In this document: positions 3,151-46,860 of the stretch, piece by piece
Layout: each line of letters starts with the position of its first letter
How positions within the stretch are numbered: the first letter of the stretch is position 1
Assembly (NCBI RefSeq): GCF_000143415.4
Contig: NW_003314282.1
Coordinates: forward strand, 1,135,374-1,199,373
Length of the DNA stretch: 64,000 bases
Reading direction: 5' to 3'
From: Selaginella moellendorffii
Taxonomy: Eukaryota > Plantae > Lycopodiophyta
Notes under the pieces: generated by a model
What the model was told of the DNA's origin: nothing
What the model saw: only the letters and a program-made list of their open reading frames with translations
Database searches by the model: none
Made by a program: the position numbers and the translations under genes

Positions 3151-6100
3151 CTATCCTTTGTTCCAGCCCCTTTCACGCTGGTGCATGGAACCCTTCCTGC
3201 CACTGAGAATTCGTTGGGCTCCTCCTGGATGCTTGTTCCAGGACCTGGCCACCAAACTTACTCGTCTCATTCTGGTACCACTGGACTGCTTTGTTTCCGG
3301 GAGGTTGTCGCACGTTTCCTTCTTCAACGCCATCAGCTTCTCCCTCGACCGCATTAACGGCGAGCTGAAGTGTACTCTTCTGTGTTGCCTTAGCCTTGTG
3401 AGCGTTCCAGGAACGTCGATACCTTTCCAGGCTACGGAAGGGACGTTGCTATCTTCTACCTGGAAGGTGCGGCTCTCTGCTTGGACGATACTCTGCACTG
3501 TCTTAATGTCCTCTTGCACCTCCGATGACTTAAGCTGAGTTGATGGAGTCTCCACGACGAATTTCGTTGGAGCAGGAGCCAAGGACGTCCGTCGAGTGAT
3601 TCCGCACAGCGAAGTTCGGCGGGGCATTGGCATAAGCGGCGGAGAATTGAATCTCGAAGGTACCACCTTCAGCCTTGCGTGTGGAGGCTTGCGTAGAACC
3701 GAAGTAAGACCATCTGGATTTTGGGGATCGATGTTCTCGTTTTGCAGAGCACGGTTTTCACCAAGGACTTTGGGAGCTTTCTCGTCTTTGCTTAGCGGCT
3801 TAAGCTCATTCTCCAGCGCCCGCTCTTGTAACGGTTGTCTGTAACTATTTTCCTTGGGGTGAAAACTAGCGGCTGTTTTAAACGCAGCTTCAAGAGCTTC
3901 TTCCGCATTCGCCCTGTCAGCCCTGTCCCACGATCCTTCTCTATCAGCTTTCAGACGCTTTTCCTTGAGAGCCACTTCTGCTGCAAGACGAGCTTTCTTC
4001 TCGGTGGCTAGCTGGAGCTCCAGTTCAGCAGCAACTTTGTCTCGGTCCTTGACCTTTTCAGCTAGGCTCTGACACAGTTGTTCTTTTACCTTCAGTTTAC
4101 TTTCGGTGGTACGTAAGCTGTCTTCGAGCCTTCTGACGCTATCATCCTTGGTTTTCACATCTTGCTTAGCCTTCTCTGCCTGCATGCTCTGGGTTTTAGG
4201 AGACTGAGATTCACAGAGAAATACTTTACCATTTGCTTATACTTGAAAAACTCCGAGGAATCGAGCTGCTTCTTTGCCGGACCCATCTCTACACCACGTA
4301 CTCTGCTAGCAAAATTTAAGGAGCACAACGTTTCCCCGACATCAGCCTCGGTGGGGCTTATCTGTACGAACATAAGAGTCTTCGATTCTCCTCCTGCACA
4401 AAAGAATGAATGGACAATTGAAGAGGGAACGCCAGACATACCAAGCGAGTCTTGCAGAAGATGTGTTAACTTCGAGTTCCTGCACAATGCCCGACTAATT
4501 AATGTCTGCGTTGCTCTAGACCTGAATTACCTGTAAGGCACGTGGTTACTTTTCGTCGTTAGAGCGTGAATAACATCTCCCAGGGCTGATAACGACTTGT
4601 TGATGTTCTGAGCTTCTTTCAGGCGATCACCCTGAACATCACTTTTTGCAACTCTCTCGCTTCCAGCAAGATCGACAAGCCAAAGCTTGCTGCGAGTACA
4701 TTCTCCTGTAGTCATGTTCTCGCCTCTTACTTTCACGCACAACATGCTGCAACGGCATCATTAGAGACCAAAATTTAAACTTCAAGACGTTATACAAACC
4801 AGTGAGAACGGCTACTATGTTCGTTAGCATTTGTAGAGCCAACAGCTCGAGCAGCGCTCCCGCTTTGGAGAACCTCCCATACTTCTGTCATGCTGTGTAC
4901 CTCAGCCTCGACGAGGCCAGGAACACGATGGCCACCATCAGCGTCTTGCTTAATTTCTAGCCTGAACAAAATGTGTTAGCAAGCCGCAATAATAGCTTTG
5001 CCTACCTCTTTGGCGCCAGACCAGCTTGAGATGGTGTTGTCAACAAGTCTCGGATCTGCTCATTATAAACTTCTAGAACACTAACTTTTATCTCATAGTT
5101 GACCTCTCCTTTGCGTACAGTAGATAGTCGAAAAAGTTCCTCCAATGTACGATAGTTGACACCTCGGTTTCCTGGAATGCCTTCCATCGTGAATGTTTTG
5201 CCAGTACCTGTTTGTCCGTAGGCAAATATGCACACGTTGTAGCCATCCAGGACAGATACAACGACCGGAGACGTGTCTGCAAACACTTCAGCTGCACAAC
5301 GGAAACGAGGATCAGCTTGTGAATATAGACTTTGCCATATACTCACGTTGATCGTCTTCGGGAGTGAACACTCGATCAAACTTGTAGAGCTTTTTCGGAT
5401 TGGTGCCAGCCCGAATGACGAGTTCATTCTCTCTAGCGGAGTCAAACTCGACTACTGACACCGACGATGCTGACGCTTCTGATGCATTCAACGGTCTGCA
5501 TCTGCAAAACACCCTAACGTTCCCTGGAAGAAAACTCATGAAATCAATTATACAGATGTAGCAAACTTGCCTTTCATTTCAATCAACTTGTTGTACAAAA
5601 ACTTCCGTTCTTGACTCTCGTCTAGTAGTCTTTTCTTTAACTCCTTCTGTTCATTCACTGACAAAAACGATATATTCAGCATTGAAGTAAGTCCAACTGC
5701 GCTCGGCCTTACCTAAAGCTTGAACCGCAGAAACCATGCCATGGGGATCTGGAAAGGAGCATATACAATCTCTTGCGTCCTTGGACAGGAGACTATAGAG
5801 TATTCTGAGTTCCTGGATTATCAACAAATGAATAAGTATCAGAAGACAGAGAAAGAAATGGACGCTAACCTCGACTTTCCTCTGGGCATCACTGACGGCT
5901 AGCTTCAACTTCGTCTTTTCGTTCATTTCTTTTTCCTTCAAATCTCTTAGCTCCAGCACCTGAGTTTCCACGGCATTTGCTGATAACAAAACAAAAAGCA
6001 TAAAGTCTTAACTCAATCTAGATAATCGTACCGAGTGTATCGACAGTAAGAGACTTCACGGAAAGTTCATCACGTAATTTTTCAGCTTGGCGATTGGATT

Positions 6101-7250
6101 CTTGAACAGAAATCCAGGCCTGATGGCACTCGTTTCTGAGTTCTTCCAATCTTTGCTCGCTTTCAGTAACTGCTCCTCGACTTTTATCCCTCATCTGAAG
6201 CAATCCAAACCATCATTAATAGTTTGAGAAAAAGTAGCGCTGCATTACGAACCTGCTCACAAAACGTGAGTCTGCGAGCATTCTGCTTCTGGCAGTTTTC
6301 CAACGCAAGCTCGTAAATTGGTCGTGGCTTACGACCGGTTCGCTTAGCTGGATCAAACAAAAAAATCAACAAATTATTTACTACATTGAAGAAACGCACC
6401 AAGAGGAGGAGCTCTGTGAACGCAGATGGCGCTGATGGTGGGATTTCCAACAACGCCACGAAATGCCAAAGTAAGAACACCGCCGTCGACTGCAGCTCGC
6501 ACGTTTAGCAAAATCAAGGGCCTGTTCGACCCCACCCGTCCATAGACGTCAAGATCCGAGACAACCTATACGCAAGAAGGACAAACGTAAAAAGTGAAAA
6601 GAACATGAAAAAATTCCAAAGACTCTCACCTTCTCGTCCTGAATGTAGACGTCAAAGATCCTCATCCCAGGAGGACCATTCGTGAAAATAATCTCGGCAA
6701 AGTGGATATCCACGTAGTAATCTCCACTTTCCAGTCCATCTAGGGCGTAAGTAACCTCCCCATACCTTGCTGTGCGGTATAGCGAAGGCTCCTGCGCATC
6801 AACGATATCTTCGGCAGTTCTAAGCACATCTCCACCAGAGAAAAATCGATCGTCCACGAAATCGATGCCGAAAGATGTATCTAGAATCGATGAGCCACCG
6901 GCATTTATCGCGGCCACGACCTTGTCTGGAAATAGGCATAGGCATGGCGGCAGAGTATTTCGCGATGCTTCTCGCAAGAACAAGAACATACCTGGAATGT
7001 AATTGAACGAGAGCTCGTTCCCCTCGCAGAAACTGCTAAGAATTTCCTCTCCATCTCCCAAATCCAGCTCGAAATCTCGCACCGGGCTCGAGAAAACCGT
7101 GATTTCTTCGTCATCCCTGGCCGCGACCCTGGAATCCTCTGCCGCGGACGCTTCTTCGATCATCGGATCCTGGCGAGCAGCGTCATCAGCTAGATCGCCG
7201 CCACAGCCCTCTCTAGACGCTCGACGCAAGAAATCTAACATCGCTGCCAT
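3151..7250 (-). CDS. Kinesin-14 with N-terminal malectin (di-glucose-binding) domain
   Basis: Malectin motifs [27 protein letters not shown]; coiled coil; motor motifs [54 protein letters not shown]; many short introns. Confidence 0.93.
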
Positions 7251-7487
7251 TCCCAAAACCTAAAAGAAACAAGGGCAAAAGGGCAAATAGACTAGCCGTT
7301 GGCTTTAAAATGTCCCGCCCAAATGGTCGGATTTGTTTAGTCAACTAAGCCTATTTACCACAATAATCACGATTAAGCTTTTCCTGGCATTCCAAGAGAG
7401 AAAGCAACACAAGAAGCCGCGATGGCGCTCGCGAATCAAAGAAACACACGGACACACATGAAAGGAAATTTCTTCACTGCGACGCGA

Positions 7488-7712
7488 TCACTTCTTGCTC
7501 GCGGGCGGACTGTAGGTCGCGCTGCCTTTGCCGCTGTTGTAGTACGTCGATCCATTGGGATTGGAGTAGTAGTAGGATCCGTTCTGGTTGGAATAGTGGT
7601 ACGCGTTGGGATTTGGAGCCGAGGCGCCATAATCGCGAGAGCAGTAGTGATTTCCCTGCGAGTTCGTCCCAGAGCCCTTGTAGGAGTAGCCCTTCTCGCC
7701 CGATCCAGACAT
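7488..7712 (-). CDS. 74-aa Tyr/Asn/Ser/Gly-rich microprotein (GTNSQGNHYCSRDYG...YHYSN.NGSYYYSNPNGSTYYN), unknown function
   Basis: Intronless ORF with ATG at 7712 in good context (ACAATGT), internal repeats, pyrimidine-rich leader and upstream G-boxes. Confidence 0.75.
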   Translation of the reverse strand: MSGSGEKGYSYKGSGTNSQGNHYCSRDYGASAPNPNAYHYSNQNGSYYYSNPNGSTYYNSGKGSATYSPPASKK

Positions 7713-7874
7713 TGTAGCAAGCGCGCCTGCGAGAAAGGCGAGAGAACAAGGAGGAGAATCGAAGCGATCGAGAGATAGAACCCTACCTCGAAAACCGAAA
7801 AAGCCCACGGAAAGAATGGCACAAAACCCTCTTTGCTTGGTGATCTATAAATGCCTGCTGACGGCGGTTTTATT

Positions 7875-7906
7875 CCACGTGGCGGTTCGTTACTCTGCCA
7901 CGTGGA
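7875..7906. promoter_or_regulatory. Pair of G-box/ABRE elements upstream of the microprotein gene
   Basis: CCACGTGGC (CACGTG 7876-7881) and GCCACGTGG (CACGTG 7899-7904), about 30-55 nt upstream of a TATA-like element at about 7845-7851. Confidence 0.55.
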
Positions 7907-7999
7907 CACTTGGGAATTTACGGTCACAACGAAGAACTTCCAGTTCTTCGAGATAAATATCTCATATTTACAAACTGCTGCCTGTAAAAATTTCTTGTG

Positions 8000-9665
8000 C
8001 TACGCGAAGACTGGAGCGCTGGAGGAAGACGACGATGGCGTCTTGTTGTTTGATTCTTCTTTTCCCCACCAAGTAGCCAGCGTCAATCCCATCACTGCCA
8101 TTATCACCACCGAGCAAGCCGGAGGAACTGCTTGAGTGTCGCCCAAAAACTGGGTGGCCAGGAGCATTGCTAGCGTCGAGCTTTGCATTCCAGTGCAAAG
8201 TGACAGTGTTCTTGACACCTTGTGATTTTGCCTGAGATACAGAACAAAAAGGAACTCGAAGTAAGGATTAACGGAACTAGAAGCGAAGAACTTTAGTTAC
8301 CTCCAGAAGGGAAGTCTCGAGATGAAATAGCCAAGACCAAAGCCAAGGGCGTGGAATACCAGCACCGGGAACAAAAGCTGGAGACCTTCCATTGATATGA
8401 TCTTCGACTGGTTGAGAGCCAGAGGGCTTCCAATGCACAGCGACGTGCAAACCATGGCAACCAGCGGCATCACGGGACGTATTCTGTCCACCAGCGGCTT
8501 TGCGTAAGTGTTGAGAGTAAGTCCTGTTAGAACCGGAAGAAAGACCACCTGAAACAAGGAAAGGATTTGAGTTACATGAAATCTCGAGGCCATAGTTTAC
8601 CTGGAGAATTGATTTCGCCATGGCTACGACGTCCACTGGCACAACTGAGCCAATCAAAAACTGCGTAAGAAAAGGCGTGACGATCACAGAAGTAATCGTG
8701 CTGATGCTCGTAAGCATGATGCTGAGAGCTATGTCGCCTTCACTTAAGTAAGCCGCGTAGCTGGAGAGCTGAGCACCCGCAACACAAGCCGTGAGAATGA
8801 GACCCGCGGCAAACGAAGGAGGAACACCGAAGCCTCTCACTACCAAAAACCCGAGTATTGGCTTCATCACGTATTGAAGCACGTAGCCCATGCATAGAGG
8901 CAAAGGCCTGAATCGAAAAAAGAAAAGGAAGAACTTCTCAGTGCAAAAAAACATGGACTGTAAGCTCACCTCTGCAAAACAATCGCGAAGTCGGATATGG
9001 AAAGCTGGACGCCTATAGAGAGCATGATTCCTCCAAGTGCCGGAGCATAGTGCTCTTTTCTGACCCTGAAAGTTCATCAAAGTTTATATCCAATCTCAGT
9101 GATAAAACCTTGATTTGGATGGACAGAAGAAAGCTAGATCAATCTCAAAAGTTCTCGGTGAGAAATTCTCTTACGTACCACGCAAATGTAGCTGGGTGGA
9201 TGAGCGCCGCGGCAGCAGTGGCCACCACAATGTATGGCAGCATTTTGGAGAGCGACTTGGCTATGTCGATCTTCCTTCCTTGGCTGTCCCTCTTAACCTT
9301 CAAGCCAAAAGACGCCAGGGGATTCTCTTCTCTAGAAACCTTTCGGGAGCTATGATCCTTGGGAGCTTTGGAGAATACCTGGAGCTTCCCGATGCTACTC
9401 GCGCTGTTGTTCGCGCTGCTGGCTGGATGAAAATCGCCAAATTTCGAGAACATCCCGTCCTCTGCCTCGCTGTGCTCGATGCGAGAGCAATAGCGCCTCC
9501 ATCGCCTTCGACCTGGAGCGGCATTCGAAATATCTATCATCCATCGCTGCGAAACCAAATTGCCTCACACATACCTCTGGGAAGGACGCTTCTCGAGCAC
9601 AAAACCCTGAGAGACAAGAATGTGCCCTGCGAGACCGCGCTACTCGTCGTCAGCACGAATGCCAT
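8000..9665 (-). CDS. Plastid bile acid:sodium symporter family protein (BASS3-like)
   Basis: Transit-peptide-like N-terminus MAFVLTTSSAVSQG; motifs QYVMKPILG, GLILTACVAGAQLSSYA, SRTLSLCTGMQSSTLA, VPPACSVV. Confidence 0.9.
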
Positions 9666-10346
9666 CTCCGGCGAGGCAAAATAGCGGCGTCAACACCGCC
9701 AGAGCTTCATTCCGGGATAAAATCCGTGAGAACCGACCGAGCGCCGCGCCCGCCCTCTTTGCCTATCTATCGCGCCTCACCGCCATAGCTAAAAGCTCAC
9801 CCTATCAATTCATTCACAAAGCGGGGAACAAAGAAATTCCATTGCGAGTACGGTCGGATGCCATAAACGTACGAAAGAGAGGATATTTAACGATATTCCT
9901 AGAGATATATGCTGTCCTTTAGGTCATTCAAATGGCGCTCTTTCTTGTTGCTAAATAGACACAGTTGAGCCACAAGGCTCGATTGGTGGTGTGGAGACCA
10001 CTGTCGTGGAAGAAGCTCATTCCTACACGCTGCTTTAATAGTTATATTCGAACTCGTGCATAGAATCTATACCATAGAGATTTAAACAATTGAGCAAACC
10101 ATAGAGCATGGTAAAACTTAATTAGCTCCGTGACATCCTTCATGACTTGCTAATGTAGCAGGCACTCTTTTCCCCGGCCTTAATTATTTTCTTCGATTGT
10201 AATGAACACTTTGCTAGAGCTTTGTGGCCGCGTCTCTAATAAACAAGAGCTCACTAGTGTAAGCAGACAAAGAAAAACTGGGAGTTACCTTTGTTTTTCT
10301 ACTGCCCGTACAAGCTTATTCCATGCGTCGTCAGTGGTGCTTTTCT

Positions 10347-39028: not shown

Positions 39029-39037
39029 CCACGTGGC
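39029..39037. promoter_or_regulatory. G-box (GCCACGTGGC) in the GGP promoter
   Basis: Palindrome, CACGTG at 39030-39035. Confidence 0.45.
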
Positions 39038-46579: not shown

Positions 46580-46860
46580 AAGGGGGCCCATGCCACATGC
46601 GCATGGGGCCCCATGCCAGGTCGGTCGGTCACTTTATTGACCGGGGGCCCACGTGGAGCGTGCCGTGCCACGTAGGTAAAATTCCCCCGCCCCTTTCCCC
46701 TTTCACACCTCCAGTAGTCAACCAATAAAGAAAGGTAAAGTGGGCGTCACCCGTCAACGGCTGACGTGACGTGGTGATCTGTAGGTCGGCGGGAACGTGG
46801 GCCCCAAGTGGCAGGCCACGTGGGAATATGACGACACGTCAGCGGGCCCCAACCCAGAGG
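46580..46860. promoter_or_regulatory. GC-rich cluster of ACGT-core (G-box/ABRE) and GGCCC(A) motifs, putative distal enhancer
   Basis: CCACGTGG, CCACGTAG, TGACGTGACGTGG, AACGTGG, GCCACGTGG, GACACGTCA and several GGGCCC within 280 bp. Confidence 0.45.

What the first reader, a model, noticed from the sequence alone, without database searches (positions are those of the whole stretch)
7488..7906. Fungal-like Y/N/S/G-rich 74-aa microprotein under tandem G-boxes: candidate HGT stress peptide
Seen: intronless, unlike its immediate neighbours; has GTNSQGNHYCSRDYG followed by repeated YHYSN.NGS/YYYSNPNGS/TYYNSG units, no signal peptide, and two CACGTG boxes just upstream of a TATA-like element. From memory (unverified), very similar small hypothetical proteins are widespread in filamentous fungi and not in angiosperms. 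Inference: a horizontally acquired gene, domesticated under ABA/desiccation or light control. The aromatic-polar repeats suggest beta-hairpin/amyloid or phase-separating behaviour.
Basis: partly seen in the sequence, partly recalled or inferred. Interest (0 to 1): 0.75.

Follow-up and report, generated by a model that had tools for sequence, protein, structure and literature searches.

The report
Fungal-type microprotein gene in Selaginella
The spikemoss Selaginella moellendorffii carries and strongly expresses a 74-residue tyrosine-rich protein otherwise found only in fungi and two amoebae, so it was probably gained by horizontal transfer, although the protein is too short for a tree to prove this.

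Summary
The ORF is real: window 7488-7712, minus strand, 74 aa. The genome is Selaginella moellendorffii. The gene lies between a BASS transporter gene and a malectin-kinesin gene in two assembled haplotypes that are 97-98% identical. They differ in the CDS by four synonymous changes and one replacement. Stranded RNA-seq covers it 146-308x, against 2-7x (kinesin) and 15-40x (BASS). It has its own 5' end (~7804) and 3' end (~7384). The CDS has no intron, but the transcript has a 60-nt GT..AG intron in the 5'UTR, so "intronless" needs correcting. Two perfect CCACGTGG G-boxes lie about 71-101 nt upstream of the mapped 5' end.

The protein is 73-81% identical to the best-matching members of an uncharacterised family with no Pfam model. 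Named members come from Dikarya, chytrids, Acanthamoeba and Planoprotostelium; S. moellendorffii is the only plant. The five homologues with inferred gene structure carry an intron at or within one base of one site that the Selaginella CDS lacks. Trees are unresolved, and an AU test does not reject Selaginella lying outside fungi. Transfer is therefore the best reading on distribution alone.

AlphaFold2 predicts a six-stranded beta-meander (pLDDT 85). Function, ABA or light control, and amyloid or condensate behaviour remain untested. Earlier scan notes list other fungal-type candidates in this genome; I did not check them.

The parts
7488..7712 (-). Coding sequence of the 74-aa microprotein: ATG at 7712-7710, stop at 7490-7488, no intron
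   Evidence: translation; 99% identical to SELMODRAFT_443235 and 73-81% to the best fungal proteins. RNA depth 146 and 308 across it.
7384..7487 (-). 3'UTR, about 104 nt; transcripts end near 7384
   Evidence: table 6: molecules begin at 7384/7385 on the plus-strand axis, which is the 3' end of the minus-strand RNA. Depth falls from 74-163 to 6-10 in the next bin.
7713..7726 (-). The 14 nt of 5'UTR that lie in exon 2 (GCGCGCTTGCTACA before the ATG; A at -3)
   Evidence: position of the joint.
7727..7786 (-). Spliceosomal intron of 60 nt in the 5'UTR (GT..AG on the minus strand); 63 nt in the other haplotype
   Evidence: Joint 7725->7786 in 2 and 10 reads. Loose ends at 7728 in 51 and 77 reads read CGAAAACCGAAAAAGC, which is window 7789-7804. 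The same joint is seen in contigs of X1 and X3. A TCG insertion at 7757 marks the other allele.
7787..7804 (-). Exon 1, about 18 nt; the mapped 5' ends of transcripts lie near 7804
   Evidence: The loose-end consensus stops at 7804 (median 16 nt), and reads end at 7804. The true start site could lie a few nt further upstream.
7846..7852 (.). TATA-like element: TATAAAT on the plus strand, 42-48 nt upstream of the mapped 5' end
   Evidence: Identical in the other haplotype. Function is inferred.
7875..7882 (.). G-box 1, CCACGTGG followed by C (the ACGTGGC ABRE core on the plus strand), about -71 to -78 from the mapped 5' end
   Evidence: 5 copies in the window against 0.52 expected. Identical in the other haplotype. 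The region is barely transcribed, at depth 1.4-3.4.
7898..7905 (.). G-box 2, CCACGTGG preceded by G (the ACGTGGC core on the minus strand), about -94 to -101, 23 bp from box 1
7980..9900 (-). Upstream neighbour on the same strand: BASS/SBF-family transporter gene with 52-113-nt introns; its transcripts end near 7980
   Evidence: PF01758 SBF on the syntenic haplotype. (joints, and molecules beginning at 7980).
3159..7256 (-). Downstream neighbour on the same strand: malectin-kinesin gene; its coding sequence starts about 230 nt after the microprotein stop. Coordinates are approximate, mapped from the other haplotype.
   Evidence: PF11721, PF16796, PF00225. (synteny). (spliced reads at depth 2-7).

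Best explanation
This is a real, single-copy, highly expressed nuclear gene of Selaginella moellendorffii. It encodes a member of an uncharacterised, very strongly conserved microprotein family of fungi, which is also present in two amoebozoans. The plant most likely gained it by horizontal transfer from a fungus or another soil eukaryote. The transfer is old: synonymous sites look heavily diverged from the fungal genes, and the gene now has a Selaginella-sized intron in its 5'UTR and a plant-type promoter with a TATA-like element and two CCACGTGG G-box/ABRE elements. The coding sequence lacks an intron that the examined fungal and amoebal genes carry at or within one base of one site, which fits entry as a spliced copy or later intron loss. 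The product is a 7.9-kDa, basic, cytosolic protein with no aliphatic residues (Ser 20%, Tyr 16%, Gly 15%, Asn 12%). It is predicted to fold into a six-stranded single-layer beta-meander whose last strands are joined by 'N-x-(N/D)-G-S' turns and display rows of tyrosines. Shown here: integration, two alleles, expression, splicing, family membership and taxonomic pattern. Inferred: the direction and mechanism of transfer, and the fold. Speculative (about 0.3): that it acts as a stress-induced hydrophilin-like protectant or a small tyrosine-faced binding module, switched on through bZIP or bHLH factors at the G-boxes.
For: Integration. The same gene (one S68T difference) lies on the 1.85-Mb scaffold GL377596.1, between the same SBF/BASS and malectin-kinesin genes. 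That locus is collinear with the window at 97-98.4% identity, i.e. a second haplotype. The CDS differs by 4 synonymous changes and 1 replacement, and both G-boxes are identical.
Expression. Depth is 146 and 308 in two stranded RNA-seq runs, against 2-7 (kinesin) and 15-40 (BASS). The strand is minus, and the gene has its own 5' end (~7804) and 3' end (~7384). The 60-nt intron is spliced. Letters of both alleles appear in the reads. Contigs of two further studies hold it.
Family. 204 word-search hits; the best matches are 73-81% identical over 77-100% of the query. The profile search finds 602 representatives at E<=1e-3. All invariant and nearly invariant family positions are kept. Queried with an Aspergillus protein, the Selaginella protein ranks 34th of 265.
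Distribution. Named hits are Ascomycota, Basidiomycota, chytrids, Acanthamoeba and Planoprotostelium; the only plant is S. moellendorffii.
Gene structure. An intron lies after GTNSQ: phase 0 in Rickenella, Acanthamoeba and Geranomyces, one base earlier in the Terfezia solution, and apparently read through in Planoprotostelium (P0330). A second intron after YHYSN is seen in Terfezia and Rickenella. The Selaginella CDS has neither.
Age. Nucleotide identity to five homologues is 60-70%. About half of the codons for identical residues are identical.
Fold. AF2 gives pLDDT 84.9 and six strands.
Composition. GRAVY -1.41, Gly 14.9%.
Promoter. CCACGTGG enrichment.
Precedent. Three fungus-lycophyte transfers are credited to Richards et al. 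2009 in the review PMC12448838.
Against: The phylogeny gives no support. With about 82 columns most forks are open. The nearest neighbour of Selaginella changes between runs (Penicillium brevicompactum; Savitreella and Terfezia). Chytrids nest inside Ascomycota with a star, which shows that starred nodes on this alignment can be spurious. The AU test does not reject Selaginella plus Acanthamoeba outside a fungal clade (p = 0.61). The family is also in Amoebozoa, with the shared intron site, so it may predate fungi. Genomes of other lycophytes, ferns and bryophytes could not be searched at the DNA level. Genes of 74 aa are often left unannotated, so 'only one plant' is a statement about named proteins in the collections. 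An intron-free CDS also exists on an environmental, probably fungal contig (L006), so lack of introns does not prove a spliced intermediate. No stress expression data and no study of any family member were found.
Confidence: 0.65

Rival explanations
1. The gene is an ancient eukaryotic gene inherited vertically. It would have been present in an early eukaryote, kept in fungi, some Amoebozoa and the Selaginella lineage, and lost (or left unannotated) in all other sampled plants.
For: The family occurs in two amoebozoans as well as in fungi, with the intron at or within one base of the same site. The AU test does not reject Selaginella plus Acanthamoeba lying outside fungi (p = 0.61). Conservation is so strong that 75-80% identity carries no information on time. 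Tiny genes are easily missed by annotation.
Against: It requires many independent losses across Archaeplastida. No plant, alga, animal or SAR name appears among about 190 named hits, although amoebal proteins of the same identity are listed. The Selaginella CDS lacks the shared intron.
Confidence: 0.2
2. The sequence is fungal contamination or an assembly chimera, not plant DNA.
For: The protein is typical of fungi, and plant tissue samples often carry fungi.
Against: The gene lies about 230 and 270 nt from intron-rich plant genes on a 1.85-Mb scaffold, and again in a second, 2%-diverged haplotype. Its transcript carries a Selaginella-sized 5'UTR intron and both allelic forms. One RNA contig runs from the BASS 3' region through exon 1 into the spliced exon 2 (X3 record 7 and its loose end).
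Confidence: 0.02
3. The ORF is not an independent gene. It would be translated, if at all, as an upstream ORF of the kinesin mRNA or as part of the BASS 3'UTR, and its resemblance to fungal proteins would be a low-complexity accident.
For: All three genes are on one strand with very short spacers. A few reads cover the spacers, and contigs extend across them.
Against: Coverage is 20-100 times that of kinesin and 4-10 times that of BASS, with its own sharp 5' and 3' ends. The match runs the full length, including the non-repetitive N-terminal motif, at E = 3e-26 in a database of 5.8 billion proteins. The alleles differ by 4 synonymous changes and 1 replacement.
Confidence: 0.02
4. This rival concerns function only. 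The protein would be a low-complexity, prion-like or amyloid-forming sequence that phase-separates, not a folded mini-domain.
For: It is rich in Tyr, Asn, Ser and Gly with no aliphatic core. A single-layer sheet cannot bury a core by itself and may stack.
Against: Ten positions are invariant and 22 more are kept in at least 90% of 68 sequences spanning fungi, an amoeba and the plant. That is unlike fast-evolving low-complexity regions. AF2 gives one confident topology (pLDDT 84.9).
Confidence: 0.15

Closest known systems
Unnamed fungal microprotein family (e.g. Penicillium rubens Pc16g06240, Fusarium oxysporum FOXG_00891, Cordyceps militaris CCM_05491, Acanthamoeba ACA1_366970); all are annotated as hypothetical and none has a Pfam model
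   Same: Length of about 70-90 aa. The GTNSQGNHYC(S/A)RDYG motif, the YHYSN-x-(D/N)GS-YYYSN-x-(N/D)GS-TYYN repeats and the TY(T/S)PP...KK tail are all present. The best matches are 73-81% identical.
   Different: The host is a vascular plant. The CDS has no intron, whereas the fungal and amoebal genes have one or two. The 5'UTR intron and the G-box promoter are specific to the plant copy.
Fungus-to-lycophyte or fungus-to-moss horizontal transfers (Richards et al. 2009, Plant Cell, as cited in PMC12448838)
   Same: A gene typical of fungi is found in a non-seed land plant, is integrated in the genome and is expressed.
   Different: As I recall, those cases are enzymes and transporters long enough for supported trees. 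I did not check the paper's gene list. Here the product is a 74-aa protein of unknown function whose tree is unresolved.
Hydrophilins / LEA-type stress proteins
   Same: Small, very hydrophilic (GRAVY -1.41) and glycine-rich (15%). No signal peptide. The promoter carries ABRE-type ACGTGGC cores.
   Different: There is no LEA or dehydrin Pfam match. The protein is tyrosine-rich, is predicted to be folded beta rather than disordered or helical, and is far more conserved than typical hydrophilins. Induction by water loss was not tested.
Single-layer beta-sheet domains: CPAP/SAS-4 G-box (TCP10_C), MORN repeats
   Same: The predicted six-stranded open beta-meander superposes on the CPAP G-box at Z 6.4-7.0, rmsd 2.6-3.4 A, over 58-62 residues. 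It also resembles Tcp10_C and MORN clusters in the ESM Atlas.
   Different: Z is below the level (about 8) at which such matches are informative. There is no sequence relationship (7-13% identity; no Pfam hit among 68 members). The CPAP domain is part of a large centriolar protein.
OCRE domain (RBM5/RBM10; PF17780)
   Same: It is a tyrosine-rich, all-beta mini-domain built from short aromatic repeats. UniRef labels one family member (P0088) 'OCRE domain-containing'.
   Different: No member of the 68-sequence alignment hits the Pfam OCRE model at E<=10. No OCRE structure appears in any fold-search list.

Membership tests
Fungal GNHYCSRDYG / YYYSNPNGS microprotein family (unnamed) | Full-length similarity to family members, well above chance | tested here: met
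   E = 3e-26 to 1e-15 in a 5.8-billion-protein search; the best matches are 73-81% identical over 77-100% of the query; the profile finds 602 representatives.
Fungal GNHYCSRDYG / YYYSNPNGS microprotein family (unnamed) | All invariant positions (N21 R26 H39 Y40 S41 N42 Y49 S50 N51 Y57) and the nearly invariant ones (G15-G20, H22, C24, D27, Y28 and others) are retained | tested here: met
   (alignment A1, 68 sequences). The Selaginella sequence itself is one of the rows, so invariance includes it by construction.
Fungal GNHYCSRDYG / YYYSNPNGS microprotein family (unnamed) | Intron after GTNSQ | tested here: not met
   the intron is present in Rickenella, Acanthamoeba and Geranomyces (phase 0) and one base earlier in the Terfezia solution; apparent read-through at the same site in Planoprotostelium P0330. 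It is absent from the Selaginella CDS and from the environmental contig L006, so it is not universal in the family.
Horizontally transferred gene (fungus to plant) | Physically integrated in the recipient genome, not a contaminant | tested here: met
   two haplotypes with the same plant neighbours; plant-type 5'UTR intron and both alleles in RNA.
Horizontally transferred gene (fungus to plant) | Absent from the recipient's relatives | tested here: inconclusive
   no other plant among the named hits. The big search gives no names. Genomes of other lycophytes, ferns and bryophytes cannot be searched with these tools.
Horizontally transferred gene (fungus to plant) | Nested within the donor clade with statistical support | tested here: inconclusive
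   unresolved trees with unstable neighbours. AU p = 0.61 for Selaginella plus Acanthamoeba outside fungi.
Hydrophilin (criteria recalled from Garay-Arroyo et al. 2000: Gly >6%, hydrophilicity index >1, induced by water deficit) | Composition criteria | tested here: met
   Gly 14.9%, GRAVY -1.41.
Hydrophilin (criteria recalled from Garay-Arroyo et al. 2000: Gly >6%, hydrophilicity index >1, induced by water deficit) | Accumulation under water deficit | not tested
The drought paper's supplements do not list the gene.
OCRE domain (PF17780) | Match to the Pfam model | tested here: not met
   no hit at E<=10 for the query or for any of the 68 family members.
TCP10_C / CPAP G-box | Sequence or clear structural match | tested here: inconclusive
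   Z 6.4-7.0, below the informative range; no Pfam hit.
G-box/ABRE-regulated plant promoter | ACGT-core elements within about 100 nt upstream of the start site | tested here: met
   two CCACGTGG at -71 to -101, each with an ACGTGGC core, conserved between haplotypes.
G-box/ABRE-regulated plant promoter | Response to ABA, dehydration or light | not tested
   No treatment series could be laid on the locus.

The most novel reading that the evidence does not exclude
A pan-fungal, ultra-conserved cytosolic 'tyrosine-ladder' beta-sheet microprotein is missing from Pfam and from the searchable literature. It could be a self-contained stress-protection or binding module that has moved between kingdoms into soil-dwelling eukaryotes (a lycophyte, and perhaps amoebae). 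In Selaginella it would have been rewired to the plant ABA/G-box circuit, making it one of the smallest functional inter-kingdom transfers into a plant.
Probability: 0.3. Interest if true: 0.7.

Novelty: new member of a known kind. Interest (0 to 1): 0.55.

Why it matters
Transfers from fungi into early-diverging land plants are known but few, and pipelines based on trees miss very short proteins. This case shows a tiny foreign-type gene that is fixed, under purifying selection and among the more strongly expressed genes of its neighbourhood. It also has a host-type promoter and a host-type intron. The case draws attention to a very conserved fungal protein family with hundreds of 50%-identity representatives, no Pfam model and no published function. 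A plant copy with a simple promoter offers a second system in which to find out what the family does.

Tried and rejected
1. Pfam scans of the query and of all 68 aligned members gave nothing meaningful: DUF7028 at E = 0.3 in 4 members and no OCRE, LEA or Tcp10_C hit.
2. A profile search of PDB sequences gave only chance-level matches (choline-binding repeat at E = 0.84; antibody CDRs).
3. Foldseek against PDB gave no match at E<=0.001. VIA-align, wide search and second look, reached at most Z 7.0, on generic open beta-sheets.
4. Donor identification by tree failed. The careful 70-row tree and the quick 35-row tree disagree on the nearest neighbour. One AU-test script did not return and was repeated on a smaller set.
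5. Cluster look-ups on ten unnamed hits, to see whether any came from a plant, returned no organism names.
6. Paper searches found nothing relevant for the Selaginella locus tag, a sequence motif, six fungal and amoebal locus tags, or the supplements of a Selaginella drought paper.
7. No target-site duplications or terminal repeats flank the gene; only short chance repeats were found.
8. There is no second copy in the window.
9. Contamination and the uORF/UTR reading were rejected.

Full report
**Observation**

Its composition is unusual: Ser 20%, Tyr 16%, Gly 15%, Asn 12%. Apart from Met1 there is no Leu, Ile, Val, Phe or Trp. GRAVY is -1.41, pI 9.2 and mass 7.9 kDa, so there is no signal peptide or membrane segment.

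The two upstream 'CACGTG boxes' are both the full palindrome CCACGTGG, at 7875-7882 and 7898-7905. The window holds five copies of this 8-mer against 0.52 expected, and no shuffle out of 100 reaches five. The bare hexamer is not enriched. A TATAAAT lies at 7846-7852.

**Whose genome, and is the gene really in it?**

- The best database hit (99% identical; it differs by S68T and lacks the last Lys) is SELMODRAFT_443235 of Selaginella moellendorffii.
- That protein is encoded on the 1.85-Mb scaffold GL377596.1, between an SBF/BASS transporter gene and a malectin-kinesin gene.
- The scaffold region is collinear with the window at 97.0-98.4% identity, so the window is the other haplotype or another assembly of the same locus.
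- Within the 225-nt CDS the two copies differ at five sites: four synonymous and one replacement. The two G-boxes and the TATA-like element are identical. A 10-bp indel lies just upstream of the boxes and a 3-bp indel lies in the 5'UTR intron.
- There is one copy in the window, and only this one Selaginella protein cluster appears among the hits.

Contamination is therefore excluded.

**Expression and gene model**

| Feature | Result |
|---|---|
| Depth over the CDS bin 7564-7710 (two stranded RNA-seq runs of 2026, about 12% of each read) | 146 and 308 |
| Depth over the kinesin gene | 2-7 |
| Depth over the BASS gene | 15-40 |
| Strand | First mates all lie on the plus strand, as expected for a minus-strand RNA |
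| 3' end | Near 7384 |
| 5' end | Near 7804 |
| Intron | 7727-7786, 60 nt, GT..AG on the minus strand, 14 nt before the ATG |

The intron is supported by 12 joint reads and by 128 reads whose loose ends read exactly 7789-7804. The joint is also present in assembled contigs of two further studies. This intron is the same size as the 52-69-nt introns of the neighbours.

So the coding sequence has no intron, but the gene is not intronless. The spliced leader holds no upstream AUG, and the start codon has A at -3 (read).

BASS transcripts mostly stop near 7980, and the stretch 7858-8004 has depth of only 1.4-3.4. The G-boxes therefore sit in a real promoter gap, about 71-101 nt upstream of the mapped 5' end. 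Each carries an ACGTGGC core, on opposite strands.

Reads carry the letters of both haplotypes; for example, 7510 C>G is seen in 57 of 79 and 150 of 193 reads. Both alleles are therefore transcribed.

**Relatives**

- The word search found 204 proteins. The best matches are 73-81% identical over 77-100% of the query.
- A profile search of 1.84 billion representatives found 602 at E<=0.001 and 197 at E<=1e-10.
- Every named hit is 'hypothetical' or 'uncharacterized'.
- The organisms are Ascomycota of many classes, Basidiomycota (including rusts, smuts and Tremellomycetes), the chytrids Geranomyces and Thoreauomyces, the amoebozoans Acanthamoeba castellanii and Planoprotostelium fungivorum, and S. 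moellendorffii.
- No other plant, alga or animal name appears.
- Queried with an Aspergillus protein, the Selaginella protein ranks 34th of 265, ahead of many ascomycetes.
- The family has no Pfam model.
- The ESM Atlas neighbours are unnamed fungal clusters.
- No paper mentions the Selaginella tag, a sequence motif or six locus tags of fungal and amoebal members.
- The alignment of 68 members shows 10 invariant positions and 22 more that are kept in at least 90% of rows.

**Gene structures**

I worked out exon structures inside a script by finding the GT/GC..AG splits that reproduce the annotated proteins. The joined coding sequences were used only there, for intron mapping and base counts.

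- Rickenella, Acanthamoeba and Geranomyces have a phase-0 intron between GTNSQ and GNHYC. The Terfezia solution places it one base earlier.
- The Planoprotostelium protein (P0330) carries an insert at the same site that looks like a read-through intron. Several fungal proteins in the hit lists show similar inserts, which suggests mis-annotation.
- The two Dikarya examined (Terfezia, Rickenella) have a second intron after YHYSN.
- The Selaginella CDS has neither intron.
- An environmental, probably fungal contig also has an uninterrupted CDS (L006).
- Nucleotide identity between the Selaginella CDS and five homologues is 60-70%. Only about half of the codons for identical residues are identical, so any transfer is old.

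**Phylogeny**

With about 82 usable columns the trees are largely unresolved.

- The careful 70-row tree places Selaginella beside a long Penicillium branch inside a weak Eurotiomycete group. It also puts chytrids inside Ascomycota with a star, a warning that starred nodes on this alignment are unreliable.
- The 35-row tree gives different neighbours (Savitreella, Terfezia).
- The AU test does not reject a tree with Selaginella plus the Acanthamoeba pair outside all fungi (p = 0.61).

Transfer is therefore inferred from the taxonomic pattern, not from topology. The donor cannot be named.

**Fold**

- AlphaFold2 with the 68-row alignment gives mean pLDDT 84.9 and pTM 0.62. It predicts six strands: 10-16, 22-27, 36-41, 47-50, 56-59 and 65-68.
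- The last four strands fall in the YxYS-type stretches, joined by turns containing N-G-S or K-G-S (read).
- The best structural look-alikes are single-layer open sheets. The CPAP/SAS-4 G-box scores Z 6.4-7.0 at rmsd 2.6-3.4 A over 58-62 residues. Phage spike tips, polo-box 3, and MORN and Tcp10_C clusters also appear.
- All of these are below the level at which such matches are informative.
- One UniRef label suggests an OCRE domain, but neither the Pfam scans nor the fold lists support it.

**Interpretation**

The firm result is a real, fixed, strongly expressed plant gene for a protein of a fungal-type family. It has host-type regulatory and splicing features and shows signs of purifying selection: four synonymous changes against one replacement between alleles, and full retention of the family's conserved positions despite heavily diverged synonymous sites.

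Horizontal acquisition is the most economical account. Fungus-lycophyte transfers have precedent: three cases are credited to Richards et al. 2009 in PMC12448838. Vertical descent with massive loss remains possible, at about 0.2.

Function is open. The hydrophilin-like composition and the paired ABRE-type G-boxes fit a stress-induced protectant. The very strict conservation and the confident fold fit a small binding or self-assembling beta-sheet.

Earlier notes of the scan (s1-346889, s1-398862) report other fungal-type candidates elsewhere in this genome. I did not test them, and they do not count as support.

Noticed in passing
window 39029-39036, 46649-46656, 46816-46823: Three more perfect CCACGTGG G-boxes, two of them 167 bp apart. 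They may mark other G-box-regulated promoters in the window.
   Followed up: no
window 9064-9178, 9106-9177, 9295-9377: The BASS gene shows alternative splicing. Two competing joints share nearly the same acceptor (skipping 113 or 70 nt), and an 81-nt joint is seen in one run only.
   Followed up: no
window 7758-8230: RNA contigs of X1 and X3 run from the BASS last exon across the G-box promoter. In X3 the contig continues into the spliced exon 2 of the microprotein gene. This suggests some BASS read-through transcription, or merged assemblies.
   Followed up: partly
window 7921-7930: A 10-bp indel between the two haplotypes lies just upstream of the G-boxes. It is also seen in the X3 contig.
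   Followed up: partly
P0075, P0083, P0087, P0089, P0093, P0107, P0108, P0112, P0114, P0115, P0330: Many deposited fungal proteins and one amoebal protein of this family carry inserts at the two intron sites. They look like unspliced introns, i.e. mis-annotation of a tiny gene.
   Followed up: partly
L004 (Acanthamoeba castellanii KB008073.1) and P0330 (Planoprotostelium fungivorum): Two amoebozoans, one of them a fungus-eater by name, carry the family, with the intron (L004) or an insert that looks like it (P0330) at the same GTNSQ|GNHYC site as fungi. The Acanthamoeba protein is 82% identical to that of the lichen fungus Endocarpon pusillum. It is open whether these copies are ancestral or also transferred.
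   Followed up: partly
window 7510 and linked sites: In both 2026 RNA-seq runs about three quarters of reads carry the other haplotype's letters and one quarter the window's. This could be allelic imbalance or a mixed sample.
   Followed up: no
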